Below are positions 7,251 to 37,157 of a stretch of 64,000 nt of DNA, one piece after another. The notes under the pieces were generated by a model that was not told the origin of the DNA, did not search any database, and saw only the letters and a list, made by a program, of their open reading frames with translations. Position 1 is the first letter of the stretch, and every line of letters begins with the position of its first letter. The stretch covers positions 1 through 64,000 of IMG/VR virus record IMGVR_UViG_3300024999_000030. One strand, given 5' to 3'. The position numbers and the translations under genes were made by a program.

Positions 7251-7284
7251 AGGGGGCCGGAGAAATCCGGCCCCCTTGATTTTT
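7251..7284 (+). terminator. Rho-independent terminator after MCP
   Basis: AGGGGGCCGG/CCGGCCCCCT stem plus T-rich tail. Confidence 0.75.
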
Positions 7285-7339
7285 GTCTATTAATGTATTA
7301 TATTTACAGTGTAAACCTAAAGACATGAAGGAGAGTAAG

Positions 7340-8281
7340 ATGGCGACTATGGGAGTATATGCAATTAAAAATAAAGTGAATGGTAAAATATATATAGGTT
7401 CCTCAAATGACCTTCATCGACGCAAGCTGGTCCATTTTAGGGAATTAACTAATAATAAACATTGCAATCGTTGGTTACAAAAAAGTTTTATCAAACATGG
7501 GATGGATAATTTTGAGTTTGAAATTATTGAAGAGGTTCAAGATGAATTAAAATTGATTGAGCGAGAGCAGTATTGGTTAGATTTTCACAAATCATATCAA
7601 TCTCGAAATGGTTATAATATTTGTAAAGTAGCTGGAGGAACAGACGGCATTACGTATACAGAAGAGTCCAAACAGAAAATTTCGGAATCCAGATTGGGTT
7701 GTCCTGGCACTGGTAAAAATACAAAAGGGGACCCAAATAATTTTAAAGCCAAAACATATTGTTTTAAAGACCAAGATGGAAATAACATCGAAATTAAAAA
7801 TCTAGAAGAATATTGTAGACAACATAGTCTCGATGAATCTCATATGAGAAAAGTCTTTTATGGTCGAGCTAAAACTCATGCGGGTTATTCTCTACCAGAC
7901 TATAATCCTCCTCCAGTTAAAGAATACGATTTCAAGGACCCGCAGGGGAATATTCATCACGTAGTTGGGAATCTCAAGAAATGGTGCAGAGAAAACAATC
8001 TTCGATACAGTTCTGTTCAGTATCTAGTCTCTGGCAAAGTCTACCAAGTCCAAGGCTGGTCCCGCCCCCTTACCGAGCTGAAGTCAGCTTATTACAAAAT
8101 CCAACATCCAGACAATAGTATTTCAGAAACCAATAACCTTGCAGAGTTTTGTAGGCAAAATAATTTGGACGGAGGCGCCATGGCTTTAGTTGTTCAAGGC
8201 AAACTCAAACAGCATAAAGGATTTAAGGTTTTAGAATCTTATGTTCCGCCTAATAAATCTCGGCGTAAGAATGTTAATTAA
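7340..8281 (+). CDS. GIY-YIG homing endonuclease with repeated C-terminal DNA-binding modules
   Basis: GVYAIKNKVNGKIYIGSS, R and ELKLIEREQ motifs; three repeats of the Y.F.D..G.......NL..(W/Y/F)CR...L module. Confidence 0.85.
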   Translation: MATMGVYAIKNKVNGKIYIGSSNDLHRRKLVHFRELTNNKHCNRWLQKSFIKHGMDNFEFEIIEEVQDELKLIEREQYWLDFHKSYQSRNGYNICKVAGGTDGITYTEESKQKISESRLGCPGTGKNTKGDPNNFKAKTYCFKDQDGNNIEIKNLEEYCRQHSLDESHMRKVFYGRAKTHAGYSLPDYNPPPVKEYDFKDPQGNIHHVVGNLKKWCRENNLRYSSVQYLVSGKVYQVQGWSRPLTELKSAYYKIQHPDNSISETNNLAEFCRQNNLDGGAMALVVQGKLKQHKGFKVLESYVPPNKSRRKNVN

Positions 8282-8582: not shown

Positions 8583-9716
8583 ATGGAGGGTGACCATAAG
8601 GTGAACGACGATTCGTCGCTAAAAAATAACTACTTCCCTGAAATTTCTATTGAAGACTGGAGCGATTGGAAGTGGCAATATCGTAATAGAATCAAGACAG
8701 TCTCAGGACTGTCTAAATTTTTACCTGTAGACTCTGAATTGTTTAAACGTAGCAACCATGAGCTTCACATGGCTATTACTCCTTATTACCTTAGTCTTAT
8801 TGATAAGAAAAATTATCACGATGATCCAATTTACAAACAGGCAGTACCATCATTAGAAGAATTTAATGATGCAGGGTTAATCGATCCTCTTCATGAATCT
8901 GAGCAGTCTCCAGTAGACGGCATCGTTCATCGCTATCCAGATCGTTGTTTGTTTATTAGTACATCTTGGTGTGCGATGTACTGTAGATTTTGTACGCGAA
9001 AAATTCAATGGGAACACGGCGAGATGCCTAAGTCTCGTCGTCAATTAGAGGCGATGCTGGACTACATTCGTAAGACACCAGCAATTAGAGATGTTATTCT
9101 ATCTGGTGGAGATCCATTATCTCTTCCAATGGATACCTTGGAATTTATTCTATCTTCTCTTCGGAGCATTTCTCATGTTGAGATTATTCGAATCGGAACG
9201 CGTTTTCCAGTAGTATTGCCCCAAAGAATAACAGAAGATTTAACAAACATATTAAAAAAATATAGACCATTATATATCAATACTCATTTTAATCATGTAA
9301 ATGAAATTACAATAGAATCTTCAGCTGCATGTGATAAATTACTTTGTGTTGGTATCCCCGTAAATAATCAATCTGTACTTTTACGTGGAGTTAATAATAC
9401 CACTCAGGACATGCTAAACCTTTGTCATGGTTTATTGAAAATTGGAGTTCGGCCCTATTATTTGTTTGCTTGTGATGCTGTCAAAGGGGCTGAGCATTTT
9501 AGAACTACAATAGAAACGGGTATAAATATTATTGCTGGTATGCGTGGTTTTACTTCTGGTTTAGCTATTCCTCAATTTGTAGTTGACACAGAGGGGGGTG
9601 GAAAGGTTCCAGTAAATCCACATTACGTTGCTCGTAATGAAAATAATGAAATTGTATTGTATAACTATGAAGGTAAAGCTTTTAAATATAAAAATCCAGA
9701 AAAAAACAATAATTGA
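8583..9716 (+). CDS. kamA: KamA-family radical SAM protein (lysine 2,3-aminomutase/EpmB-like)
   Basis: W.DW.WQ N-terminus, HRYPDR, CAMYCRFC (CxxxCxxC), SGGDPL, RIGTR, NQSVLLRGVN, GGGKVP. Confidence 0.9.
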   Translation: MEGDHKVNDDSSLKNNYFPEISIEDWSDWKWQYRNRIKTVSGLSKFLPVDSELFKRSNHELHMAITPYYLSLIDKKNYHDDPIYKQAVPSLEEFNDAGLIDPLHESEQSPVDGIVHRYPDRCLFISTSWCAMYCRFCTRKIQWEHGEMPKSRRQLEAMLDYIRKTPAIRDVILSGGDPLSLPMDTLEFILSSLRSISHVEIIRIGTRFPVVLPQRITEDLTNILKKYRPLYINTHFNHVNEITIESSAACDKLLCVGIPVNNQSVLLRGVNNTTQDMLNLCHGLLKIGVRPYYLFACDAVKGAEHFRTTIETGINIIAGMRGFTSGLAIPQFVVDTEGGGKVPVNPHYVARNENNEIVLYNYEGKAFKYKNPEKNNN

Positions 9717-10313: not shown

Positions 10314-10891
10314 TGTATGTAGAAATATCTCCTAGACAAACTGGTAAAACTACTAGACTTATAGCGGCTATTAAGGCTCATTTAGCAGCTCATCCGTCAA
10401 ATGAAGCTATACTGTATGCCGTTAATTATAATTATATTTATAATTCTATGCCTCTTGTGGATCAAGGCCGCATTAATCGTTTCAGTCGCTGTAGCTATGC
10501 CGGTCGCAATAAAATTAAACTATTTGTAGATGAATTCGATTACTTATTATCAATGGAAGATTTTAATGAAATTCGTTGTAGATATAATTTAAATAATTCA
10601 TATTGGAGCACAACACCAAGGTTTATAAGGAATTCAATTAAGAAAGACGATGATGTTTTATTATCTATCTTATTTCTTAATGGAGGAAAGTGGTTTAGTA
10701 TGAATAAGGCTAACGTTAGACATGTTTGGAGGAATCGTTTTTATCTTAAAACTATTTCAAAAGAAGTTATGAAAATAGAATATTTTGGTTACTGGTTTCC
10801 GCCGGGAATGCTTCCGGTGTTATCTAAAGATGTTTATAGTCCAGCCGGATTTATAGAACATTTTATTCCACCTAAATGGCTTGACTTTTGA
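10313..10891 (+). CDS. P-loop NTPase-like protein (terminase/helicase-like Walker motifs)
   Basis: SPRQTGKTT Walker A; LFVDEF Walker B-like. Confidence 0.55.
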   Translation: MYVEISPRQTGKTTRLIAAIKAHLAAHPSNEAILYAVNYNYIYNSMPLVDQGRINRFSRCSYAGRNKIKLFVDEFDYLLSMEDFNEIRCRYNLNNSYWSTTPRFIRNSIKKDDDVLLSILFLNGGKWFSMNKANVRHVWRNRFYLKTISKEVMKIEYFGYWFPPGMLPVLSKDVYSPAGFIEHFIPPKWLDF

Positions 10892-10909
10892 CTATTAATA
10901 TTTTATATT
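10881..10909 (+). promoter_or_regulatory. Promoter of tRNA operon 1
   Basis: TTGACT-N17-TATATT, with CTATTAAT inside the spacer. Confidence 0.85.
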
Positions 10910-10929
10910 ATTAATGAAAGAGAAATGAA

Positions 10930-10998
10930 ATGAATATAGTAAATAGTTCACTCCTGTTATCGTTGTCTAGTCTTCCTAGCGCCCGAGGGGTGTTCTAA
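10930..10998 (+). CDS. Attenuator leader peptide 1 (Leu/Ser-sensing) MNIVNSSLLLSLSSLPSARGVF
   Basis: 11 of codons 6-17 are Leu/Ser, using five different Leu and five different Ser codons; the 3' end is the antiterminator strand. Confidence 0.85.
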   Translation: MNIVNSSLLLSLSSLPSARGVF

Positions 10999-11023
10999 GT
11001 CTATCTCCCTTTAGACTTTTGAC

Positions 11024-11058
11024 AAGCCCCTCGGAAATCGGGGGGCTTTTGGTTTTTT
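11024..11058 (+). terminator. Attenuator terminator 1
   Basis: AAGCCCCTCGG-AAA-TCGGGGGGCTT plus U-tract; its 5' strand also pairs with CGAGGGG at 10984. Confidence 0.85.
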
Positions 11059-11060
11059 AT

Positions 11061-11147
11061 GCGGATATGGTGGAACTTGGTAGACACAGAAGTCTTAAAA
11101 ATTTCTGGCCCATGGCCGTCCCAGTTCAAATCTGGGTATCCGCACCA
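11061..11147 (+). tRNA. tRNA-Leu(TAA)
   Basis: Cloverleaf, loop CT-TAA-AA, long V-arm, encoded CCA. Confidence 0.92.
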
Positions 11148-11150
11148 AAT

Positions 11151-11237
11151 GCGGTGGTGATGTAATTGGTAGCCATGTCAGCCTTAGAAGCTGATGGAAG
11201 AAATTCCGTATCGGTTCGAGTCCGATTCACCGCACCA
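11151..11237 (+). tRNA. tRNA-Leu(TAG)
   Basis: TCAGC-CTTAGAA-GCTGA arm, long V-arm, CCA. Confidence 0.92.
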
Positions 11238-11280
11238 AAAAGGGGATACTGGACGAAGATTAAATATGGTAAATTATAAT

Positions 11281-11358
11281 GGGCCGGTGATGCAATTCGG
11301 TAGACATCAATCTCTCAAAAAGATTGTTTTAAGGTTTCGAACACCTTCCGGCCTACCA
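11281..11358 (+). tRNA. tRNA-Leu(CAA), short variable region
   Basis: CAATCT-CTCAAAA-AGATTG; only ~4 nt before T-stem; CCA. Confidence 0.85.
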
Positions 11359-11365
11359 AAATAAT

Positions 11366-11453
11366 GGAGGGTGGGGCCACTTGTCTAGTGGACACCGCCT
11401 TGAAAGCGGTTGAGACTTTAGGGTTTTCGGTTGAATTCCGACACCCTCCTCCA
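11366..11453 (+). tRNA. tRNA-Ser(TGA), 8/4 acceptor/T-stem type
   Basis: GGAGGGTG/CACCCTCC 8 bp, TCGG/CCGA 4 bp, 5 bp D-stem with 5 nt loop, U73. Confidence 0.8.
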
Positions 11454-11456
11454 AAT

Positions 11457-11544
11457 GGAAGATTGGCCGAGTGATTTAAGGCTCCGGTTTGCTAAACCGG
11501 CGAGTCGAAAGGCTCCAAAGGTTTGAATCCTTTATCTTCCGCCA
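11457..11544 (+). tRNA. tRNA-Ser(GCT), canonical 7/5
   Basis: CCGGT-TTGCTAA-ACCGG, long V-arm, G73-CCA. Confidence 0.92.
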
Positions 11545-11547
11545 AAC

Positions 11548-11635
11548 GGAGAGTGAATCGGTCGGGGACCGAACACGCTCGGAAAGCGTTGTGTATCCGC
11601 AAGGATATAGGAATCGTGCTCTTCGCTCTCCGCCA
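11548..11635 (+). tRNA. tRNA-Ser(GGA), 8/4 (or 9/3) type, C33
   Basis: GGAGAGTG(A)/(T)CGCTCTCC, long D-stem TCGGT/ACCGA, loop TC-GGA-AA, V-arm with GCAA loop. Confidence 0.78.
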
Positions 11636-11641
11636 ATTTAT

Positions 11642-11728
11642 GGGAAGTGATCTGAACCGTTGTTCAGCATCGTCTCGAAAACGAATGGGACCTTCGGGTT
11701 TAGGGTTGAACTCCTTCGCTTCCCGCCA
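11642..11728 (+). tRNA. tRNA-Ser(CGA), 8/4 (or 9/3) type
   Basis: GGGAAGTG(A)/(T)CGCTTCCC; 6 bp D-stem CTGAAC/GTTCAG with 4 nt loop; loop CT-CGA-AA. Confidence 0.8.
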
Positions 11729-11731
11729 AAC

Positions 11732-11763
11732 AAAAAAGCCCAGGTATAAATACCTGGGCTTTT
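11732..11763. terminator. Bidirectional terminator ending tRNA operon 1
   Basis: AAAAAAGCCCAGGTA-TAAA-TACCTGGGCTTTT between convergent units. Confidence 0.8.
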
Positions 11764-11782
11764 ATTAATATGTTATTGGATT

Positions 11783-12202
11783 TTATTTCTTGTTATACAA
11801 TTTCAAATTTGATCTTTTATTAAATTTACTTATTGATAAATCTGAGCCCTCAATCCATGCAAAAAACTCGGCTCTAGATAATGGTACAGCTTCTCCTGTT
11901 GCATAATTTTCTATATATATACCAGCTGGGGTATATGATCCCCGCACATATTCTTTAATAAGATTTTTTTGTGCACTAGTTATGTTTCCATCTAATCTTA
12001 TGGCCATTCCGCTACCAGGAAAAACATGTATCTCAATGGCATTCTTTCCTTTAACTCCTAAAGCCTCTTTAGTACTACGATGTTTACCATTTAAAGTTGG
12101 AACAAAAGAACCATTTTCTAAAACTATTAAATGTTGTCCTTTATATTCTTCTATATTGTTAGCTGGTTCTATTTTTAAAGCTTGAGCTATAAAAAGACGC
12201 AT
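11783..12202 (-). CDS. Hypothetical protein (only convincing minus-strand gene)
   Basis: GGGAG RBS and CTATTAAT motif on the minus strand upstream; ends at the bidirectional terminator. Confidence 0.7.
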   Translation of the reverse strand: MRLFIAQALKIEPANNIEEYKGQHLIVLENGSFVPTLNGKHRSTKEALGVKGKNAIEIHVFPGSGMAIRLDGNITSAQKNLIKEYVRGSYTPAGIYIENYATGEAVPLSRAEFFAWIEGSDLSISKFNKRSNLKLYNKK

Positions 12203-12272
12203 AGATAGTCTCCCAATCAGGCTATAATTATTAATAGCTTGACTTGAACCCTAATGAGTATTATATTATTAT

Positions 12273-12620
12273 ATGTTACATAAGTTTGAATGTTTATTAG
12301 TTAAACTTAAATTATATGATTTTTGGTGGAGCCTACAGAGGCGGTGGTGGCAAACACATGTTATCAAAAATAAGACTCTTATTCCATGTGGATCATATTG
12401 TTATTGTTATTTAGATGACTTGATTCCAAACAAATATAAGCTAATTACAAAAAAGAGGTGGAAAGCTTGTCCCTATCTTAGAAATAAAATTAATGCTCCT
12501 GATCAAAATTACGGTTATTGTATTTATTTAGATTTGGGAGATTTTGACGACACTCCTTATATTTCTTTATTGTGGGATCAATGTAAAGAATGTGGAATAA
12601 ACAATGATCTTGACTTTTAA
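12273..12620 (+). CDS. Hypothetical Cys-rich protein
   Basis: Promoter at 12239; IPCGSYCY...ACPY...YCIY...QCKECGIN. Confidence 0.65.
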   Translation: MLHKFECLLVKLKLYDFWWSLQRRWWQTHVIKNKTLIPCGSYCYCYLDDLIPNKYKLITKKRWKACPYLRNKINAPDQNYGYCIYLDLGDFDDTPYISLLWDQCKECGINNDLDF

Positions 12621-14707: not shown

Positions 14708-14783
14708 GTCCAGTTAGCTCAATTGGCTAGAGCAGTATTCTCTAAAAACACTGACATCCGTTCGATCCGGATACTGGACACCA
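14708..14783 (+). tRNA. Amber suppressor tRNA (CTA)
   Basis: 76 nt cloverleaf GTCCAGT/ACTGGAC; loop CT-CTA-AA; one A.C mismatch in anticodon stem; TTCGATC T-loop; CCA. Confidence 0.85.
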
Positions 14784-15567: not shown

Positions 15568-16173
15568 ATGAAGAAATTTATTTGCACAATGTTGGCAGCG
15601 GCTCTTGTGGGGCTCTCGGCCTTTGCGGCTGCACCTGAACGTAAGTATGAGCTAACTTTTGGGCCTGCTTATACTTGGTCTGAATCAGCTCATATGCAGA
15701 GTTTGAATGGTCTTTCGTCCGCAACTAATATTAAGCTTTCGTTTCAAGATGATATGGGTCTTTATGTCGGGTTTTTCTTGCCTATTAGCAAGAATTTAGG
15801 ATTTTATCCTGGCCTTACGGCAAATTGGGACGGAAAGTTTTGGAGAGATGGTCAGTCTTATAATCAAATTACCTTTAAGACTTATGCTCTTGATCTAGAC
15901 GCACGATACAATTTTAATTTTAACAGTGGCACTTTTTATTTGATGGGTGGACCTACTATCACTTTCCTTCCCGAAGGGCAGCGACTTTCCGCGAATGTGG
16001 GTGTTGGTCTTAACTTTAAGTTGTTTTCATCTGACGCGTTTCGTCTTACCTTTGAGGGTAAGTATCGCGTCAACCCTAGCACTTTTTCCTACACTGATGT
16101 TAAGGGTGGGGATTATGAGTCTGCTCGTCCTGAGACTTGGACGGCTTTTACTGGCTTGACTTTTAAGTTCTAA
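15568..16173 (+). CDS. Outer-membrane beta-barrel protein with signal peptide
   Basis: MKK + hydrophobic + AFA signal; alternating beta strands; C-terminal GLTFKF. Confidence 0.8.
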   Translation: MKKFICTMLAAALVGLSAFAAAPERKYELTFGPAYTWSESAHMQSLNGLSSATNIKLSFQDDMGLYVGFFLPISKNLGFYPGLTANWDGKFWRDGQSYNQITFKTYALDLDARYNFNFNSGTFYLMGGPTITFLPEGQRLSANVGVGLNFKLFSSDAFRLTFEGKYRVNPSTFSYTDVKGGDYESARPETWTAFTGLTFKF

Positions 16174-16184
16174 GGTTGTATATT
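16156..16184 (+). promoter_or_regulatory. Promoter of tRNA operon 2
   Basis: TTGACT-N17-TATATT overlapping the OMP gene end; TATTAAT at 16181. Confidence 0.85.
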
Positions 16185-16218
16185 AATATTTATTGTAATA
16201 AATAGAAAAGAGGAGAAA

Positions 16219-16308
16219 ATGCTTTCTACTTGGTCTCACATCGAATTTGCCGAACGCCATAACGTGATGTTTAATGATATCGCGGGCGTTGGGAGCATTT
16301 GTTTGTAA
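16219..16308 (+). CDS. Attenuator leader peptide 2 MLSTWSHIEFAERHNVMFNDIAGVGSICL
   Basis: AGGAG RBS; codons 5-22 contain all of W,H,I,E,F,A,N,V,M,D, matching the downstream tRNAs. Confidence 0.88.
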   Translation: MLSTWSHIEFAERHNVMFNDIAGVGSICL

Positions 16309-16332
16309 GGCCAAATTAAAAGGCGTGCAAAC

Positions 16333-16366
16333 AAAGGCTCCCGGGAAACTGGGAGCCTTTTACTTT
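16333..16366 (+). terminator. Attenuator terminator 2
   Basis: AAAGGCTCCCGG-GAAA-CTGGGAGCCTTT plus U-tract; alternative pairing with GGGAGCATTTGTTTG at 16291. Confidence 0.88.
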
Positions 16367-16373
16367 ATGTGTG

Positions 16374-16451
16374 GTGACGGAACGCGAAGCGGACGAGCGG
16401 ACTGTCTGTGAAACAGTTGATTAGAGGTTTCGAGGACCTTCCGTCACACCA
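16374..16451 (+). tRNA. tRNA-His(GTG), A73, possible 8/4 fold
   Basis: ACTGT-CTGTGAA-ACAGT; GTGACGGA/TCCGTCAC can form 8 bp with AGGT/ACCT T-stem. Confidence 0.82.
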
Positions 16452-16456
16452 AATAT

Positions 16457-16532
16457 GCGTCTGTGGTGTAAAGCCTAAGCATGATGGACTCCAAACCCAT
16501 CGGATTCAGCTGGCAACTGAGCGGACGTGCCA
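16457..16532 (+). tRNA. tRNA-Trp(CCA)
   Basis: Loop CT-CCA-AA; atypical T-loop CTGGCAA; G73-CCA. Confidence 0.8.
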
Positions 16533-16538
16533 AAATAT

Positions 16539-16791: not shown

Positions 16792-16885
16792 TGCGGGGTA
16801 GACTAGCGGTTCAGTCACTTGGTTCATACCCAAGCCGCACGGTAGCCAATCCGTCAGGTGGGTTCGACTCCCATCCCCGCCACCA
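16792..16885 (+). tRNA. tRNA-Met(CAT), initiator-like, with ~23 nt variable arm
   Basis: 1.72 mismatch (T.C), A11-U24 pair, loop TT-CAT-AC, ACGG/CCGT hairpin in V-region. Confidence 0.78.
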
Positions 16886-16973: not shown

Positions 16974-17050
16974 GCCGTTAAAGAGGAAGGACACGACTCA
17001 CCTGCCTGTCACGCAGGGGAAAGCCAGTGGAAGTCTGGTTGGCGGCGCCA
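16974..17050 (+). tRNA. tRNA-Asp(GTC)
   Basis: CCTGC-CTGTCAC-GCAGG, G73-CCA. Confidence 0.87.
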
Positions 17051-17055
17051 CTTAT

Positions 17056-17176
17056 GGGTCTATCATCTAATAGGGCCATCCGTGATACTAGAGGTATTTA
17101 GTACATGCAAGGGCGAAAATTAAGATGCTCCCGCAGAAAGGGAGTCATGTGGGTGCAAGTCCCGACGGATCCACCA
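17056..17176 (+). ncRNA. tRNA-like RNA with ~45 nt D-loop insertion and non-canonical anticodon loop
   Basis: D-stem ATCT/AGAT encloses a long hairpin; CTCCC-GCAGAAA-GGGAG; imperfect T/acceptor stems; ends ACCA. Confidence 0.6.
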
Positions 17177-17468: not shown

Positions 17469-17542
17469 GGGCCGTGGAGTGTGACGCGAGCACGTTTCCC
17501 TTGCACGGAAATAGAGGGGTTGAACTCCCACACGGTCCACCA
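17469..17542 (+). tRNA. tRNA-Ala(TGC)
   Basis: TTTCC-CTTGCAC-GGAAA; G3.U70 present. Confidence 0.9.
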
Positions 17543-28835: not shown

Positions 28836-30221
28836 ATGAAAACTAATAAGAAAACTCATACTGTTGTTCATACCGCTGAAGGCGCCGTTGCAGCTAATAT
28901 TAACGCCAAGCAACAGCTCCGTAGGTCCGTTATGAGCTGCCTCCTTTGGGAGGATTCCTTCTATGAGGAAGGTGTGTCCATTGCTAAGCGTATTACCGAT
29001 TTAGTTAAAAAGGTTGATCCTGAAGATGTAGCTTCGCTCGCTATTGAAGCTCGTGAGGATTTCAAGCTTCGCCATGTTCCATTGCTCTTAGTTCGTGAGC
29101 TTGCTCGTGTGCATAAGGGAGATTCGCTTGTTTCTGATACTTTGGCACGAGTAATTCAGCGTCCAGATGAAATGGGTGAATTTGTAAGCCTTTATTGGAA
29201 AGAGGGAAGACAGCCTTTGTCTATGCAGGTTAGAAAGGGTATTGCTAAGGCCATGGGTAAGTTTAATGAATACTCCTTAGCTAAATATAATTCTTCTAAA
29301 TCTAATATTAAGCTTCGTGATATTCTCCGTTTGGTTCATCCTTCTCCAGTTGGTGATGAACAGACTCGTTTATGGAAGCGTATTTTAACCGATGAATTGG
29401 CTACTCCCGATACTTGGGAAGTTGCTTTGTCTGCTGGTAAGGATAAAAAGGAAACTTGGACTCGCCTTATTGATGAAAATAAGCTTGGTGGATTAGCTTT
29501 TTTACGTAATCTTCGTAACATGGAAACAGCTAAAGTAGATAAGGATATTGTACGTAGGGGCTTTGACCAAATTAATGTTTCTAGGGTTCTGCCTTTCCGT
29601 TTCCTTTCGGCTGCAAATGCTGCTCCTAAGTTTGAAGTTGAACTTGAGAAAGTAATGCTTAAGAGTTTTGAGGGTCGTGAAAAACTTCCTGGCAAGACAT
29701 TGTTTATTGTAGACGTGTCTGGAAGTATGGGCGGTTCGTTATCTCATAAGAGTGAAATGAATCGTCATGATGCAGCGGCAGCTCTTGCCATCGTTGCTCG
29801 TGAGATGTGTGAAGACCCAGTTATTTATGCTACAGCAGGAAACGATATGACTCGCATTCACAAAACTTCTATCGTTCCAGCTCGTCATGGGTTTGCCCTT
29901 AAGGATGCTATTCGTACTCAAGCTAACCAACTTGGTGGTGGAGGCATCTTTCTTAAGCAAGTTATGGACTATGTAAAGAACGCAGAGGGTGAGGCCGATA
30001 GAATTATCGTCATCACTGACGAGCAGGATTGCGACATCAAGCATAAGCCATCTACGGCTCAGCCATTCGGTAGGTATAATTATATGCTTAACGTTTCAGT
30101 AGAGAAGAACGGTATCGGCTACGGGCAGTGGACTCACATCGACGGTTTCTCTGAGGCTGTATTAGATTTCATTCTTCTTAGTGAGAAGGAAAACGAGCAG
30201 GAGATATGTCAGACTAACTAA
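28836..30221 (+). CDS. rsr: Ro60/Rsr TROVE-vWA RNA-binding protein
   Basis: L+R.VMSCLLWE..FYE, AREDFKLRHVPL, PDTWEV.LS, LRNLRNM, VDVSGSM MIDAS, ITDEQ. Confidence 0.92.
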   Translation: MKTNKKTHTVVHTAEGAVAANINAKQQLRRSVMSCLLWEDSFYEEGVSIAKRITDLVKKVDPEDVASLAIEAREDFKLRHVPLLLVRELARVHKGDSLVSDTLARVIQRPDEMGEFVSLYWKEGRQPLSMQVRKGIAKAMGKFNEYSLAKYNSSKSNIKLRDILRLVHPSPVGDEQTRLWKRILTDELATPDTWEVALSAGKDKKETWTRLIDENKLGGLAFLRNLRNMETAKVDKDIVRRGFDQINVSRVLPFRFLSAANAAPKFEVELEKVMLKSFEGREKLPGKTLFIVDVSGSMGGSLSHKSEMNRHDAAAALAIVAREMCEDPVIYATAGNDMTRIHKTSIVPARHGFALKDAIRTQANQLGGGGIFLKQVMDYVKNAEGEADRIIVITDEQDCDIKHKPSTAQPFGRYNYMLNVSVEKNGIGYGQWTHIDGFSEAVLDFILLSEKENEQEICQTN

Positions 30222-30243
30222 GACTGTCACTTGCTCGGTATTT

Positions 30244-30276
30244 AAGGCCCCGGGTAAGTTTTCCCGGGGCTTTTTT
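30244..30276 (+). terminator. Terminator after Ro60
   Basis: GCCCCGGG/CCCGGGGC plus TTTTTT. Confidence 0.85.
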
Positions 30277-30280
30277 ACTT

Positions 30281-30374
30281 GCGGGAGTCGTCCAGCGGCC
30301 AGGACAGCGGTCTTATAAGCCGCCTCGCTCCAGATTAGAGCAAAACGGGGGTTCGAGTCCCTCCTCCCGCACCA
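30281..30374 (+). tRNA. tRNA-Ile(TAT) with ~23 nt variable arm
   Basis: GCGGT-CTTATAA-GCCGC; GCTC/GAGC hairpin in V-region; CCA. Confidence 0.82.
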
Positions 30375-30428
30375 AATACGGCCCTCCGATTCTATATCAA
30401 TACTCAACCATAGAATCGGAGGGCCATT

Positions 30429-30731: not shown

Positions 30732-30743
30732 ATTTAATTTGAC

Positions 30744-30772
30744 TTGACTTTCTTCTATTAATATATTATATT
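30744..30772 (+). promoter_or_regulatory. Promoter of tRNA operon 3
   Basis: TTGACT-N17-TATATT with CTATTAAT in the spacer. Confidence 0.85.
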
Positions 30773-30787
30773 ATTTGAGAGAGGACG

Positions 30788-30883
30788 ATGAATATGTTTA
30801 CCCAAGGAACCCCTAAACCACAGACAAGAACATACCAACGCTATTGCGGTAGGTATGTGCAAAATTTGGGGGCTTTGTCCTAA
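30788..30883 (+). CDS. Attenuator leader peptide 3 MNMFTQGTPKPQTRTYQRYCGRYVQNLGALS
   Basis: GAGG RBS; codons 5-23 consist only of T,Q,G,P,K,R,Y,C, matching the downstream tRNAs. Confidence 0.9.
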   Translation: MNMFTQGTPKPQTRTYQRYCGRYVQNLGALS

Positions 30884-30907
30884 GTATCTGTATCGCGGTT
30901 CAAAGAC

Positions 30908-30934
30908 AAGCCCCCGAGAAATCGGGGGCTTTTT
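30908..30934 (+). terminator. Attenuator terminator 3
   Basis: AAGCCCCCGA-GAAA-TCGGGGGCTT plus U-tract; alternative pairing GGGGGCTTTGTC (30868) with GACAAGCCCCC. Confidence 0.88.
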
Positions 30935-30948
30935 ATTTAAAGAAAAAC

Positions 30949-31038
30949 GGGTCCGTCACCTAGTGGCCGAGGGTTCCAGCCTTTTAAGCTGGCGAGGTTT
31001 TACCTCCACCGTTGGTTCAAATCCAACCGGTCCCACCA
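30949..31038 (+). tRNA. tRNA-Lys(TTT) with long variable arm
   Basis: CCAGC-CTTTTAA-GCTGG; GAGG/CCTC V-arm. Confidence 0.85.
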
Positions 31039-32102: not shown

Positions 32103-32188
32103 TGAGGAGTGGCCCAATTGGCAGGGCACGGGGCTTTGGACCCCGCGTGGTCTCCACATTGAAGGTTCGAGTCCTTCCTCCTCAGCCA
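32103..32188 (+). tRNA. tRNA-Gln(TTG) with long variable arm
   Basis: U1-A72, CGGGG-CTTTGGA-CCCCG, GTGG/CCAC V-arm. Confidence 0.85.
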
Positions 32189-32194
32189 AAATAT

Positions 32195-32280
32195 GCAGGA
32201 GTCCCCTAGTGCTCGATGGGACCGCACTTGTAATGCGGCGGCGAAAGCCCACGTGGGTTGAAATCCCACCTCCTGCTCCA
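32195..32280 (+). tRNA. tRNA-Thr(TGT) with extended variable arm
   Basis: CCGCA-CTTGTAA-TGCGG; GGC-GAAA-GCC. Confidence 0.85.
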
Positions 32281-32374: not shown

Positions 32375-32462
32375 TGGGGAGTCGCGTAGCGGCCTAGCGC
32401 ATCGGTCTCTGGAACCGACAGAGGAAACTCTAACGAAGGTTCGAATCCTTCCTCCCCTGCCA
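32375..32462 (+). tRNA. tRNA-Gln(CTG) with long variable arm
   Basis: TCGGT-CTCTGGA-ACCGA; AGAG-GAAA-CTCT. Confidence 0.85.
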
Positions 32463-32551: not shown

Positions 32552-33223
32552 ATGATTAAAATAAAATTCACGTGTGAATATTGTGGAGTTGAAGGCGAAA
32601 GGCGAAAATCAGATTACAATCGAGCTAAACATCATTATTGCTCTCATAAGTGCAGTGTAAAGGCTTCGGATTCTATTGTCTACACAGAATGTGCTTTTTG
32701 TAGAAAGCAATTAATATTAAAAAGAAATAAGGTTAGGGCAAAAGCTAGAGTGTTTTGTTCTCATTCTTGTGCCTCTAAAATGATAAATGTGGAGCGAGGT
32801 GGAAAACTAAGGAAGGGAGAAATTAACTGTAGCTATTGTGGAAAAAAATTGGCCGGGGAGCAATTCAAATATTGCTCTATTTCTTGCCAACACCAACATA
32901 TCTATTCAAATTTTATTAAAGCCTGGCAAGATGGAATAGTTTCTGGTTCCACGGCAAATGGAGGTGTCGCCTCGACCATTAGAAAGTATTTACATGATAA
33001 ATATGGATGTAGGTGCGCCATATGTGGATGGAATAAAATTAATCCACATACACATAAAATCCCACTGCAAGTCCATCATATTGATGGAAATTCTCATAAT
33101 GCCAGTGAAGATAATCTTATTTTGATTTGTCCGAATTGTCACAGTTTAACTGATAAATTTGGCGCCAGAAACAAGGGGAACGGTAGAGACTCAAGAAGAA
33201 TACGAAGAGCTAATCAAAAATAA
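32552..33223 (+). CDS. HNH homing endonuclease with Zn-ribbon repeats, within tRNA operon 3
   Basis: GGAG RBS; repeated CxxC...YCS..C; CAICGW...LQVHHIDGN..NA..DNL.LICPNCHSLT. Confidence 0.88.
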   Translation: MIKIKFTCEYCGVEGERRKSDYNRAKHHYCSHKCSVKASDSIVYTECAFCRKQLILKRNKVRAKARVFCSHSCASKMINVERGGKLRKGEINCSYCGKKLAGEQFKYCSISCQHQHIYSNFIKAWQDGIVSGSTANGGVASTIRKYLHDKYGCRCAICGWNKINPHTHKIPLQVHHIDGNSHNASEDNLILICPNCHSLTDKFGARNKGNGRDSRRIRRANQK

Positions 33224-33382: not shown

Positions 33383-33465
33383 GTCAGTGTAGACGAGGTG
33401 GTCTTCTAAACCACTATTCGTAATTGGATCTGAAAATGTGGGTTCAAGTCCCACCGCTGACACCA
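33383..33465 (+). tRNA. tRNA-Arg(TCT) with rearranged D-domain
   Basis: Intact acceptor, anticodon (GTGGT-CTTCTAA-ACCAC) and T arms; only 8 nt before the anticodon stem; D-loop-like AATTGGAT lies 3' of it. Confidence 0.75.
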
Positions 33466-35597: not shown

Positions 35598-37157
35598 ATG
35601 ACTATTTTAATTATATTATTATCCCTATGGTGCATAGGGGACTTATCACTGTTTGTTTATTTCTTTAAATCTGGAAAAGCTGAACGAGAAGAAATATTAG
35701 CTCAAAGAGAACGATTATTTCAAGAAGAATCAAATCAACGCGCCAAGCTCAGTGAAGAAAGAGGGACCTTTTATGATGAGCAAGAGAAGTTTCATGCTCA
35801 ACTTGCACAATTAACGCTTACTGCTTCATCTATATCCGAAAGAGAAGATAATCTTAAGGAATATGGCTCTCAACTTGATAATGCTAAGTCAGAGTTAATT
35901 GATAAGTCTGGAATACTCAATATTAAAGAATTAGCTATAAGTGCTAGGGAAAAAGATTTATCAATTAAAGAAGCTTCTCTTGAGCATTTAGCAGAGGAAT
36001 ATAGAGCTAGGGTCGAACGCGCAGCGGAAATGTCTCTTTCTGAGGGCAAAGCTATTGTTTTAGCTAGTGCTAAAAAAGAAACTGAACGAGAAGTGGCAAT
36101 CCTCTTTCGTGAAGCTAAAGAAGAAACACAGCGTCTTGCAGATATTGAAGCACAGCGGATTATGACTTTAGCAATTGAACGGGTAGCTATTTCACAGGCT
36201 CCACTTAAACTTACGTCTCAAATTATTATTGCGGATGAAAACTTTCGTGGAAAGCTAATTGGACATGAGGGTAAAAATATTAAGTTATTGGAGGAGTTGG
36301 CAGGAGTTCAAGTCCTCACTAATAATGAAGACACTAAACTGCTAACTGTGTCTGCCTTTAACCCAATTTCAAGAGAATTATGTAAAAGAACTATTGAAGA
36401 ATTAATGACTACTAATTTTGTTAATCCCAAAAAAATTAAAGAGATATATGAAAAACATTCCAGCGAGTTGGAGAAGGAAATTTTGAAAACTGGTAGAGAT
36501 GCTTGTCGTGGTTTGGGACTTTCTATGCCCCATACAGAAATAGCTAAGCTTTTAGGAAAATTAAAATATCGCACTTCCTATGGTCAAAACGTACTCAATC
36601 ATTCAATTGAGGTAGCTCAATTATGTGGGGCTTTAGCTGGTGAACTTAAACTCGACATTCGGTTAGCAAAACGCGCTGGCCTACTACATGATATTGGTAA
36701 AGCTATAGATATTGAAAAAGAAGGCACTCATCCTGAATTAGGTGGGATTGCTGCTAGGAGATATGGGGAACATGAAATAGTTATTAATGCAATAGAAAGC
36801 CACCATGAAGACATAGAAGTGATTAATCTCATCTCCATCTTAGTTGCAGTTTGTGATGGTATTTCTGGTTCTCGTCCTGGAGCTAGAAGAAACAATCTTG
36901 CTGATTACGTGAAGAGAATAGAAACATTGGAAGGTATAGCATTGTCTTTCCAAGGGGTTACTCAGGCAACCGCCCTTCAAAGTGGCAGAGATTTAAGGGT
37001 TGCTGTGAATGCAGATATAGTGGATGATGCCATGTCTTCTCAATTAGCTAGTTTAATTGCTAAGCAAATTCATGATCAAATGGATTATCCAGGTAAAATT
37101 AAAGTTACAATTATTAGAGAAAAAAGAATGATTGCTTCTGCGGGTCATTCCTATTAA
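35598..37157 (+). CDS. rny: Ribonuclease Y
   Basis: N-terminal TM helix, coiled coil, KH (GKLIGHEGKNIK), HD domain (RTSYGQNVLNHS, AGLLHDIGK, IESHH, D.ISGSRPGAR), C-terminal GRDLRV...YPGKIKVTIIRE. Confidence 0.93.
   Translation: MTILIILLSLWCIGDLSLFVYFFKSGKAEREEILAQRERLFQEESNQRAKLSEERGTFYDEQEKFHAQLAQLTLTASSISEREDNLKEYGSQLDNAKSELIDKSGILNIKELAISAREKDLSIKEASLEHLAEEYRARVERAAEMSLSEGKAIVLASAKKETEREVAILFREAKEETQRLADIEAQRIMTLAIERVAISQAPLKLTSQIIIADENFRGKLIGHEGKNIKLLEELAGVQVLTNNEDTKLLTVSAFNPISRELCKRTIEELMTTNFVNPKKIKEIYEKHSSELEKEILKTGRDACRGLGLSMPHTEIAKLLGKLKYRTSYGQNVLNHSIEVAQLCGALAGELKLDIRLAKRAGLLHDIGKAIDIEKEGTHPELGGIAARRYGEHEIVINAIESHHEDIEVINLISILVAVCDGISGSRPGARRNNLADYVKRIETLEGIALSFQGVTQATALQSGRDLRVAVNADIVDDAMSSQLASLIAKQIHDQMDYPGKIKVTIIREKRMIASAGHSY

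What the first reader, a model, noticed from the sequence alone, without database searches (positions are those of the whole stretch)
11366..11728. Three of four Ser tRNAs (and probably His) have non-canonical 8/4 or 9/3 acceptor branches with tRNA-Sec-like D-arms
Ser(TGA), Ser(GGA) and Ser(CGA) each form 8 bp acceptor stems (9 bp possible in GGA and CGA), 3-4 bp T-stems and 5-6 bp D-stems with 4-5 nt loops; Ser(GCT) is a normal 7/5 tRNA. His (16374) has A8 pairing to give 8/4, and A73. Established: 8/4 Ser and His tRNAs and 8/4 or 9/3 allo-tRNAs were reported in some bacteria and phages (Mukai et al. 2017, NAR). Here a full UCN set uses this fold and sits under a Ser-sensing leader, which implies real decoding.
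Basis: partly seen in the sequence, partly recalled or inferred. Interest (0 to 1): 0.6.

Follow-up and report, generated by a model that had tools for sequence, protein, structure and literature searches.

The report
Phage serine tRNAs with 8/4 fold
A 333-kb groundwater phage encodes its three UCN-reading serine tRNAs in the rare "8/4" cloverleaf (8-bp acceptor stem, 4-bp T stem), a shape already reported for phage serine tRNAs, so this is a new and unusually complete example, not a new kind of molecule.

Summary
Window 11366-11728 holds four CCA-ended serine tRNA genes. Ser(GCT) is an ordinary 7/5 tRNA. Ser(TGA), Ser(GGA) and Ser(CGA) are missed by ARAGORN and by the Rfam tRNA model.

Each of the three has G8 paired to C65, a T49/C65 clash that blocks a 5-bp T stem, no U8, a 5-6 bp D stem with a 3-5 nt loop, and a long variable arm. 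Folding favours 8/4 (or 9/3) by 3.5-6 kcal/mol. Twelve canonical tRNAs of the same phage favour 7/5. Only 3 of 115 well-formed tRNAs in this and related phages show the same signature.

Similar UCN serine tRNAs in two other phage contigs carry A-U or U-A at 8:65, so that pair covaries. Pair 50:64 also covaries and 9:64 does not, which favours 8/4 over 9/3. The tRNA-His is undecidable (7/5 and 8/4 are isoenergetic). A tRNA-Ala also has an 8-bp acceptor stem.

Mukai et al. 2017 already described (8/4) tRNA-Ser together with (8/4) tRNA-His in phage tRNA clusters, so this is a new member of a known kind.

The "leader" is a 22-codon Leu/Ser-rich open reading frame with a terminator and an antiterminator. 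Two other tRNA operons have matching leaders, and that looks more novel than the tRNAs. Expression and charging were not tested.

The parts
10881..10909 (+). Promoter-like site TTGACT-17-TATATT ahead of the leader
   Evidence: The same hexamer pair recurs ahead of the leaders of the two other tRNA operons (16156-16184; 30739-30772).
10930..10998 (+). Leader ORF of 22 codons. Codons 6-17 are 11 Leu/Ser codons out of 12 (Ser AGT, TCA, TCG, TCT, AGT, AGC; Leu CTC, CTG, TTA, TTG, CTT).
   Evidence: Read from the sequence. Leu/Ser enrichment P = 1.6e-4 against the phage proteome composition.
10979..11058 (+). Attenuator. The antiterminator 5' arm lies in the last codons of the leader ORF (CCGAGGGG, 10983-10990) and pairs with the terminator 5' arm (CCCCTCGG, 11027-11034). 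The terminator hairpin at 11024-11048 plus its T run ends 2 nt before the first tRNA.
   Evidence: Terminator scan. Folds with and without the terminator 3' arm, and with the ribosome-covered stretch masked.
11061..11358 (+). tRNA-Leu(TAA), tRNA-Leu(TAG) and tRNA-Leu(CAA), all 7/5
11366..11453 (+). tRNA-Ser(TGA), 8/4. Acceptor 8 bp (G8-C65), T stem 4 bp, D stem 5 bp with a 5-nt loop, variable arm 5 bp with a 4-nt loop, U73, CCA. 9/3 is impossible (G9 clashes with A64).
   Evidence: tRNA-Sec 34.1 bits; 107.6 bits to the 8/4 model.
11457..11544 (+). tRNA-Ser(GCT), canonical 7/5 with T8, an A49-T65 pair and G73
   Evidence: (53.3 bits).
11548..11635 (+). tRNA-Ser(GGA), 8/4 (9/3 also possible). 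G8-C65, D stem 5-6 bp, variable arm 6-7 bp with a GCAA loop, T loop ATCGTGC, anticodon loop TCGGAAA (C33), G73, CCA.
   Evidence: (40.6 bits, the third-best match to a model built from the other two).
11642..11728 (+). tRNA-Ser(CGA), 8/4 (9/3 also possible). G8-C65, D stem 6 bp with a 4-nt loop, variable arm 5 bp with a TTCG loop, G73, CCA.
11734..11763 (.). Hairpin flanked by A and T runs that closes the Leu/Ser operon
   Evidence: One search lists it on the - strand. The hairpin is palindromic and is followed by TTTTATTAAT on the + strand.
16374..16451 (+). tRNA-His(GTG) with A8 and A73; the gene has G at -1. 7/5 (G49.T65) and 8/4 (A8-T65) are isoenergetic. The D and T loops are canonical.
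17469..17542 (+). tRNA-Ala(TGC) with G3.T70, A73, an 8-bp acceptor stem (G8-C65) and only 3 T-stem pairs plus a G/A mismatch
   Evidence: -25.9 vs -22.5 kcal/mol; 31 bits to the 8/4 model. A 7/5 homologue occurs in other phage contigs.

Best explanation
Ser(TGA), Ser(GGA) and Ser(CGA) are working phage serine isoacceptors built on the 8/4 cloverleaf.

Shown from sequence and comparison:
- The acceptor stem has 8 bp and the T stem 4 bp, so the stacked acceptor/T helix keeps the standard 12 bp.
- The D arm is compact (5-6 bp stem, 3-5 nt loop).
- There is a long variable arm, a G73 or U73 discriminator and an encoded CCA.

Inferred:
- The three are transcribed with three tRNA-Leu and the 7/5 Ser(GCT) as one unit (promoter-like site 10881, closing hairpin about 11734-11763).
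- They are cut out by host RNase P and 3' nucleases.
- They are charged by the host SerRS through the variable arm, the discriminator and a GGA/GGG-started acceptor stem. The phage has no class II synthetase core.
- EF-Tu accepts them because the branch is 12 bp and not the 13 bp of tRNA-Sec.
- They read UCN codons, which are 72% of the phage's serine codons.
- Output of the operon appears to be set by a ribosome-mediated attenuator whose leader is full of Leu and Ser codons, including TCA, TCG and TCT.
For: 1. All three have G8-C65 with a T49/C65 clash, and they lack U8.
2. 8/4 or 9/3 is 3.5-6 kcal/mol better than 7/5. Twelve canonical tRNAs of the same genome prefer 7/5.
3. The signature is rare: 3 of 115 tRNAs in this and related phages.
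4. A covariance model built from two of them finds the third as the next-best match (40.6 bits). Canonical tRNAs score 29 bits or less.
5. The same model finds UCN Ser tRNAs in two other phage contigs. On the 8-row alignment, pair 8:65 is GC in 3 rows, AU in 2 and UA in 2; the only non-pair is a 7/5 Ser(GCT) control. The rival pair 49:65 forms in 2 of 6 rows. All 6 D-stem pairs show changes on both sides.
6. A metagenomic 7/5 Ser(TGA) with the same first seven acceptor pairs and the same T loop has T8 and G49-C65. The partner of C65 therefore moved from position 49 to position 8.
7. UCN codons are 72% of Ser codons, and no other UCN tRNA is found in the genome.
8. The operon and leader architecture fit this reading.
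9. Mukai et al. showed that 8/4 and 9/3 tRNAs of this type are serylated and used by E. coli ribosomes (PMC5389517 abstract; PMC7609411).
Against: - There is no RNA evidence. No sequencing run holding this phage is an RNA run.
- Charging was not tested.
- Within this phage the 8th pair is G-C in all three tRNAs, so the covariation rests on distant phages. One contig shares no detectable protein with this phage. The other has 34% terminase identity.
- In the first of those contigs 7/5 is also possible.
- The alignment used for the pair counts was fitted to the 8/4 model.
- Ser(GGA) has C33 instead of the near-universal U33.
- The T loops depart from the TTCRA consensus (G56 in two, A54/T58 in one).
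- Two of the anticodon stems have a 27:43 mismatch.
Confidence: 0.72

Rival explanations
1. They fold as ordinary 7/5 tRNAs. G8 stays unpaired and there is a T49/C65 mismatch at the base of the T stem. The apparent 8th pair is coincidence.
For: A 7/5 cloverleaf can be drawn for each with one mismatch. In the two UCN Ser tRNAs of the other phage contig L115, both partners are possible.
Against: - It costs 3.5-6 kcal/mol in all three.
- U8 is absent, and the spacing between the acceptor and D stems fits 8+2+6.
- 8:65 covaries (GC, AU, UA), while 49:65 fails in 4 of 6 rows.
- The signature occurs in only 3 of 115 tRNAs.
- The Rfam tRNA model does not score two of them at all.
Confidence: 0.07
2. 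They are tRNA-like RNAs that do not decode. They could be decayed gene copies, decoys for tRNA-directed nucleases, or regulatory RNAs, as proposed for many acidobacterial allo-tRNAs.
For: - Odd T loops, C33 in Ser(GGA) and 27:43 mismatches.
- Mukai et al. found allo-tRNA(UAU) variants inactive in E. coli.
- The phage carries RNA repair and surveillance genes: a Ro60 homologue, RNase Y and RtcB.
Against: - All helices are intact, and each has CCA, a serine anticodon and a serine-type discriminator.
- They are the phage's only UCN tRNAs, while UCN is 72% of its Ser codons.
- They sit inside a tight operon of otherwise normal tRNAs, behind a leader that contains the very codons they read.
- Many other tRNAs of this phage are also irregular, so irregularity here is the rule and not a sign of decay.
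Confidence: 0.14
3. Ser(GGA) and Ser(CGA) adopt the 9/3 form (9-bp acceptor stem, 3-bp T stem) and not 8/4.
For: A9-T64 can pair in both, and 9/3 is 0.8-2 kcal/mol better in the nearest-neighbour model.
Against: - Across the phages compared, 50:64 always pairs and changes on both sides (TA, AT, GC).
- 9:64 pairs only where position 9 is A and position 64 is T. It cannot pair in Ser(TGA) here or in the two Ser(TGA) of other phages.
- 9/3 would leave a single nucleotide between the acceptor and D stems.
Confidence: 0.07

Closest known systems
(8/4) tRNA-Ser of bacteriophages, proteobacteria and rumen Clostridia (Mukai et al. 2017, NAR 45:2776; PMC5389517)
   Same: 8-bp acceptor stem with a 4-bp T stem, a long variable arm, a long D stem with a short loop, G73 or U73, serine anticodons, location in phage tRNA clusters, and company of a tRNA-His with A73.
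   Different: - All three UCN isoacceptors use the fold while the AGY isoacceptor stays 7/5.
- The anticodon stems are not lengthened.
- The T loops carry G56 or A54/T58.
- The genes sit behind a leader-peptide attenuator.
- The paper's supplementary sequences are not held, so sequence relatedness could not be checked.
Allo-tRNAs (8/4 and 9/3) of Acidobacteria, Clostridia and Proteobacteria
   Same: The same 12-bp branch geometry and the same serine identity elements.
   Different: Most allo-tRNAs carry non-serine anticodons and are thought to be suppressors or non-translational RNAs. Here the anticodons are cognate. The distant phage G004 does carry one 8/4, long-arm, U73 tRNA with a TCC anticodon.
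Bacterial tRNA-Sec (Rfam RF01852)
   Same: 8-bp acceptor stem, 6-bp D stem with a short loop, and a long variable arm. Ser(TGA) scores 34 bits against the model.
   Different: tRNA-Sec has a 13-bp branch (8/5), a UCA anticodon and a 6-bp anticodon stem, and it is rejected by EF-Tu. Here the branch is 12 bp, the anticodons read sense serine codons, and the score is below the gathering score of 47.
Ribosome-mediated attenuators of amino-acid operons (his, leu, thr, pheA, ilv leaders)
   Same: Promoter, a short ORF rich in the sensed codons, and a terminator with a competing antiterminator that a ribosome at the stop codon would mask.
   Different: The controlled genes are the tRNAs for the sensed codons, not biosynthetic enzymes. 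A full-text search found no paper that mentions both "tRNA gene cluster" and "leader peptide".

Membership tests
(8/4) tRNA-Ser (Mukai 2017) | 12-bp acceptor branch split 8 + 4 | tested here: met
   G8-C65 pairs and 49:65 clashes in all three. Supported by energies, the background rate and covariation.
(8/4) tRNA-Ser (Mukai 2017) | Serine anticodon with serine identity elements (long variable arm, G73 or U73) | tested here: met
   Anticodons TGA, GGA and CGA. Variable-arm stems of 5-7 bp. Discriminators U73, G73 and G73.
(8/4) tRNA-Ser (Mukai 2017) | tRNA-Sec-like D arm (long stem, tetraloop) | tested here: met
   5 bp with a 5-nt loop, 5-6 bp with a 5- or 3-nt loop, and 6 bp with a 4-nt loop. 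All 6 D-stem pairs change on both sides in the alignment.
Allo-tRNA group as described (not a defining feature) | Anticodon stem longer than 5 bp | tested here: not met
   The stems are 5 bp (TGA) or 4 bp plus a 27:43 mismatch (GGA, CGA). No 6th pair is possible.
(8/4) tRNA-Ser (Mukai 2017) | Serylation by SerRS and use on the ribosome | not testable with these tools
   No RNA runs exist, and the phage has no synthetase of its own of this class.
(9/3) allo-tRNA | 9-bp acceptor stem with a 3-bp T stem | tested here: inconclusive
   It is possible and slightly better in energy for GGA and CGA. The comparison favours 50:64 over 9:64.
tRNA-Sec | 13-bp branch (8/5), UCA anticodon, score at or above the Rfam gathering score | tested here: not met
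   The branch is 12 bp and the anticodons are sense. The best score is 34.1 bits against 47.
Canonical class II tRNA-Ser (7/5) | 7-bp acceptor stem, U8, 5-bp T stem, G18G19 and T54-Psi55-C56 loops | tested here: not met
   G8 and a 49:65 clash. The D loops are 3-5 nt without the GG motif. ARAGORN and the Rfam tRNA model miss them.
(8/4) tRNA-His (Mukai 2017) | 8/4 branch | tested here: inconclusive
   A8-T65 and G49.T65 are both possible. Energies are -23.0 vs -22.9 kcal/mol.
(8/4) tRNA-His (Mukai 2017) | A73 and no G-1 | tested here: inconclusive
   A73 is present. The gene has G at -1, and whether it is kept after processing cannot be told.
Leader-peptide transcription attenuator | Short ORF enriched in the sensed codons, an intrinsic terminator, and a mutually exclusive antiterminator overlapping the ORF end | tested here: met
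   This is an in-silico result only.

The most novel reading that the evidence does not exclude
The 8/4 scaffold is selected and not drift. It would make the phage's own UCN serine tRNAs (and its tRNA-Ala; tRNA-Asp in relatives) invisible to a tRNA-directed nuclease or modification enzyme that disables the host's 7/5 tRNAs during infection. The leader-peptide attenuators would then read the resulting codon hunger and switch on exactly the tRNA operon that relieves it. Together this would be a self-regulated, partly orthogonal decoding system carried by a phage.
Probability: 0.12. Interest if true: 0.85.

Novelty: new member of a known kind. Interest (0 to 1): 0.45.

Why it matters
- Standard tRNA finders miss these genes. 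The phage would be annotated as lacking any tRNA for 72% of its serine codons, and tRNA counts for huge phages are probably too low.
- This is a natural case in which the whole UCN box is served by 8/4 tRNAs beside a 7/5 AGY tRNA, in one operon. That gives a clean system for asking what the 8/4 fold buys: charging, EF-Tu binding, modification, or resistance to nucleases.
- 8/4 and 9/3 scaffolds are already used as chassis for genetic-code expansion, so new natural variants are useful parts.
- The operon context may be the first case of ribosome-mediated attenuation controlling tRNA genes. It also offers an in vivo read-out of whether these tRNAs decode.

Tried and rejected
- **T-box or other known leader RNA.** No Rfam match in 10700-11800, even at E = 10.
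- **Another genetic code.** Reading TAG, TGA or TAA as sense gives no specific gain in open frames.
- **A phage SerRS or HisRS.** No class II core domain (PF00587) in the genome.
- **Close relatives for orthologue covariation.**
  - Neighbouring proteins find only identical fragments of the same phage.
  - Contigs with 83% and 56-57% terminase identity carry no tRNAs.
  - A 344-kb ENA relative has no DNA on file.
- **Strain variants or expression in public runs.** Only DNA runs of the same groundwater studies hold this DNA, with no differences.
- **Search of the related records with my own model through the genome search.** Its first-look filter lost even Ser(GGA). I therefore fetched the DNA and searched it with filters off.
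- **Pattern scans for the T arm plus 3' acceptor strand.**
  - In viral contigs: a few 7/5 homologues, and the contig L115 that turned out to hold two more candidates.
  - In bacterial genomes: no 8/4 serine tRNA and no host clue.
  - In metagenomes: no further 8/4 copies, but one 7/5 Ser(TGA) with the same acceptor stem and T loop.
- **Protein similarity between L115 and this phage.** None.
- **Leaders in distant relatives.** None.
- **Y RNA family near the Ro60 gene.** No match.
- **Supplementary figures of Mukai et al.** Not held.

Full report
**Context.** The window is the first 64 kb of a 332,730-bp virus record rated complete. Public runs that hold it are groundwater metagenomes. About 40 tRNA genes lie on the + strand. 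Every one I inspected has an encoded CCA. They stand in three tight operons plus a few solitary genes. Table 11 reads the genome well.

**The observation.** Positions 11366-11728 hold four genes.
- Ser(TGA): 11366-11453
- Ser(GCT): 11457-11544
- Ser(GGA): 11548-11635
- Ser(CGA): 11642-11728

ARAGORN and the Rfam tRNA model report only Ser(GCT). In a permissive Rfam scan, Ser(TGA) matches tRNA-Sec at 34.1 bits, below the gathering score of 47. The other two match nothing.

By hand and by script, each of the three has these features:
- seven acceptor pairs plus an eighth pair, G8-C65
- a T at position 49 that cannot pair with C65
- a 4-bp T stem with a 7-nt loop
- a 5-6 bp D stem with a 3-5 nt loop and no GG motif
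- a variable arm with a 5-7 bp stem
- a G73 or U73 discriminator

Ser(GCT) has T8, an A49-T65 pair and a normal D loop.

**More than chance.** With the anticodon arm and T loop fixed, I forced each of the three possible splits of the branch.

| tRNA | 7/5 (kcal/mol) | 8/4 | 9/3 |
|---|---|---|---|
| Ser(TGA) | -30.2 | -34.2 | -34.2 |
| Ser(GGA) | -27.2 | -31.4 | -33.4 |
| Ser(CGA) | -23.5 | -27.0 | -27.8 |

Twelve canonical tRNAs of the same phage all prefer 7/5. Among 115 well-formed tRNAs that ARAGORN finds in this and related phages, 100 of 114 have T8. Only 3 combine a pairable 8:65 with an unpairable 49:65. A covariance model built from Ser(TGA) and Ser(CGA) with the 8/4 structure finds Ser(GGA) as the next-best match in 23.5 kb, at 40.6 bits. 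A tRNA-Ala follows at 31 bits, and all canonical tRNAs score 29 bits or less.

**Comparison with other phages.** Close relatives were of no use. Fragments with 83% and 56-57% terminase identity hold no tRNAs, and a 344-kb relative has no DNA on file. The model did find UCN serine tRNAs elsewhere.
- One 17-kb viral contig (L115) has Ser(GGA) at 11924-12013 and Ser(TGA) at 12195-12286.
- A 332-kb phage (G004, 34% terminase identity) has Ser(TGA) at L151 14139-14226.

The table of key positions gives:

| Source | 8:65 | 49:65 | Fold |
|---|---|---|---|
| This phage, 3 UCN Ser | G-C | T/C clash | 8/4 |
| G004 Ser(TGA) | A-T | C/T clash | 8/4 |
| L115, 2 UCN Ser | T-A | T-A also possible | 8/4 or 7/5 |
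| G014, 2 UCN Ser | no pair | pairs | 7/5 |
| Ser(GCT) in all four phages | no pair | pairs | 7/5 |

On the model-guided alignment of eight rows, pair 8:65 is GC in 3, AU in 2 and UA in 2. The one non-pair is a 7/5 control. Pair 49:65 forms in 2 of 6 rows. All six D-stem pairs change on both sides. That alignment is fitted to the model, so it leans towards 8/4.

A metagenomic 7/5 Ser(TGA) has the same first seven acceptor pairs and the same T loop as the one here, but it has T8 and G49-C65. The partner of C65 has therefore moved from position 49 to position 8.

**8/4 or 9/3.** A9-T64 could add a ninth pair in Ser(GGA) and Ser(CGA). Across the set, 50:64 always pairs and covaries (TA, AT, GC). 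Pair 9:64 forms only where position 9 happens to be A and position 64 T, and it cannot form in any of the three Ser(TGA). I take 8/4 as the conserved form.

**His and Ala.** The tRNA-His (16374-16451) has A8 and A73, and the gene has G at -1. A8-T65 and G49.T65 are both possible, and the energies are equal (-23.0 vs -22.9). Its D and T loops are canonical. This part cannot be decided from sequence. The tRNA-Ala(TGC) at 17469-17542 has G3.T70, an 8-bp acceptor stem and only three good T-stem pairs. Its homologue in other contigs is 7/5.

**Likely function.** The anticodons TGA, GGA and CGA cover the UCN box.
- UCN codons are 72% of serine codons in 160 long ORFs. Serine is 7.9% of all codons.
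- No other UCN tRNA turned up in the genome.
- The phage has no class II synthetase core, so the host SerRS must charge these tRNAs. The long variable arm, G73/U73 and the GGA/GGG acceptor start fit serine identity (established knowledge, and Mukai et al.).
- The branch is 12 bp as in normal tRNAs, so EF-Tu should accept them. Mukai et al. showed this for 8/4 and 9/3 tRNAs in E. coli.

The genes form one unit: a promoter-like TTGACT-17-TATATT site (10881-10909), a leader ORF (10930-10998), a terminator that ends 2 nt before the first tRNA, seven tRNAs, and a closing hairpin. Codons 6-17 of the leader are 11 Leu/Ser codons out of 12, including TCA, TCG and TCT. The last codons of the ORF are complementary to the 5' arm of the terminator. 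A ribosome at the stop codon would therefore favour termination, and a ribosome stalled upstream would favour read-through. This is inference from sequence. It fits feedback control only if the operon's tRNAs really decode.

**Relation to what is known.** Mukai et al. 2017 report (8/4) tRNA-Ser in bacteriophages, proteobacteria and rumen Clostridia. They also report (8/4) tRNA-His with A73 in the same phage tRNA clusters. The present genes meet the defining features of that class. They do not meet those of tRNA-Sec or of canonical tRNA-Ser. The lengthened anticodon stem described for the wider allo-tRNA group is absent. The finding is a new member of a known kind. Its new points are these:
- the whole UCN set uses the fold while the AGY tRNA stays 7/5
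- the same split is seen for Ser(TGA) against Ser(GCT) in a distant 332-kb phage
- the fold extends to class I tRNAs
- the genes sit in an attenuator-controlled operon

**Limits.**
- There is no RNA, charging or probing evidence.
- The covariation comes from distant phages.
- Ser(GGA) has C33.
- The T loops are unusual.

**Rivals.** A 7/5 fold with a mismatch, a non-decoding tRNA-like RNA, and a 9/3 fold are each given low weight, for the reasons in the Rival explanations section.

**In passing.** Two more tRNA operons have leaders that list exactly the amino acids of their tRNAs. The joint probability of the three matches is about 2e-11 under proteome composition. I found no precedent in the paper library.

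Noticed in passing
window 10881-11058; 16156-16373; 30739-30945: Each of the three tRNA operons is preceded by the same arrangement: a TTGACT-17-TATATT promoter-like site, a short ORF, and a terminator abutting the first tRNA, with an antiterminator overlapping the ORF end.

The ORFs list the amino acids of the tRNAs downstream.
- Leader 1 (10930-10998): 11 of its 21 residues after the start Met are Leu or Ser, ahead of 3 Leu and 4 Ser tRNAs.
- Leader 2 (16219-16308) contains every one of H, W, N, I, F, M, D, E, V and A, ahead of exactly those tRNAs.
- Leader 3 (30788-30883) has a run of 19 residues drawn only from T, Q, G, P, K, R, Y and C, ahead of exactly those tRNAs.

The three amino-acid sets are disjoint and together make all 20. 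The joint probability is about 2e-11. Three distant relatives lack such leaders. No paper in the library mentions both "tRNA gene cluster" and "leader peptide". This is probably ribosome-mediated attenuation of tRNA operons.
   Followed up: partly
window 17469-17542: tRNA-Ala(TGC) with G3.T70 and A73 has an 8-bp acceptor stem and a T stem of 3 pairs plus a G/A mismatch. It is a class I tRNA on an 8/4-like scaffold.
   Followed up: partly
L149 17992-18067 (G004); L156 4817-4893 (G014); L151 19235-19317 (G004): In distant huge phages, tRNA-Asp(GTC) genes show the 8/4 signature (G8-C65, with a clash at 49:65). G004 also has an 8/4, long-arm, U73 tRNA with anticodon TCC, which is allo-tRNA-like with a glycine anticodon.
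   Followed up: no
window 30281-30374, 16792-16885, 30949-31038, 32103-32188, 32195-32280, 32375-32462, 33383-33465: Many tRNAs that are normally class I carry long variable arms and are 82-94 nt long: Ile(TAT), Met, Lys, Gln (two), Thr and Arg(TCT).
   Followed up: no
window 11281-11358: A tRNA with the leucine anticodon CAA has only a 5-nt variable loop (78 nt, A73). ARAGORN calls it, but it is not listed by Rfam even at E = 10.
   Followed up: no
window 16457-16535, 16974-17050, 17056-17176: Irregular CCA-ended units that ARAGORN misses. One is a likely tRNA-Trp(CCA) with T loop CTGGCAA. One is a tRNA-Asp(GTC) with T loop TGGAAGT. One is a 121-nt element of unknown identity.
   Followed up: partly
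window 14708-14783: A tRNA with the amber anticodon CTA is present (ARAGORN labels it Pyl), although TAG does not look recoded in this genome.
   Followed up: partly
window 11579-11585: The anticodon loop of Ser(GGA) reads TCGGAAA, so position 33 is C instead of the near-universal U. The Ser(GGA) in L115 has the usual CT at positions 32-33.
   Followed up: no
window 11431-11437, 11706-11712, 17520-17526; L337 5609-5695: T loops of the form TTGAAYT have G at position 56 instead of C. The matching D loops contain C where GG is usual. Ser(GGA) has C56 and a G-only D loop. This suggests that the tertiary 19:56 pair is inverted in these tRNAs.
   Followed up: no
window 28836-30425; 35598-37157; genome 264121-265227: The phage encodes a Ro60/TROVE homologue directly upstream of tRNA-Ile(TAT) and a perfect 16-bp hairpin (30378-30425). 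It also encodes RNase Y and RtcB. Together these form an RNA surveillance and repair set. No Y RNA family matched.
   Followed up: partly
window 7283-8281; 32552-33223; 8583-9716: A GIY-YIG endonuclease lies near the tRNA operons. An ORF with a weak HNH match, below the Pfam cut-off, lies inside the third operon. A radical-SAM protein with a lysine-2,3-aminomutase C-terminal domain lies 1.3 kb upstream of the Leu/Ser operon.
   Followed up: no
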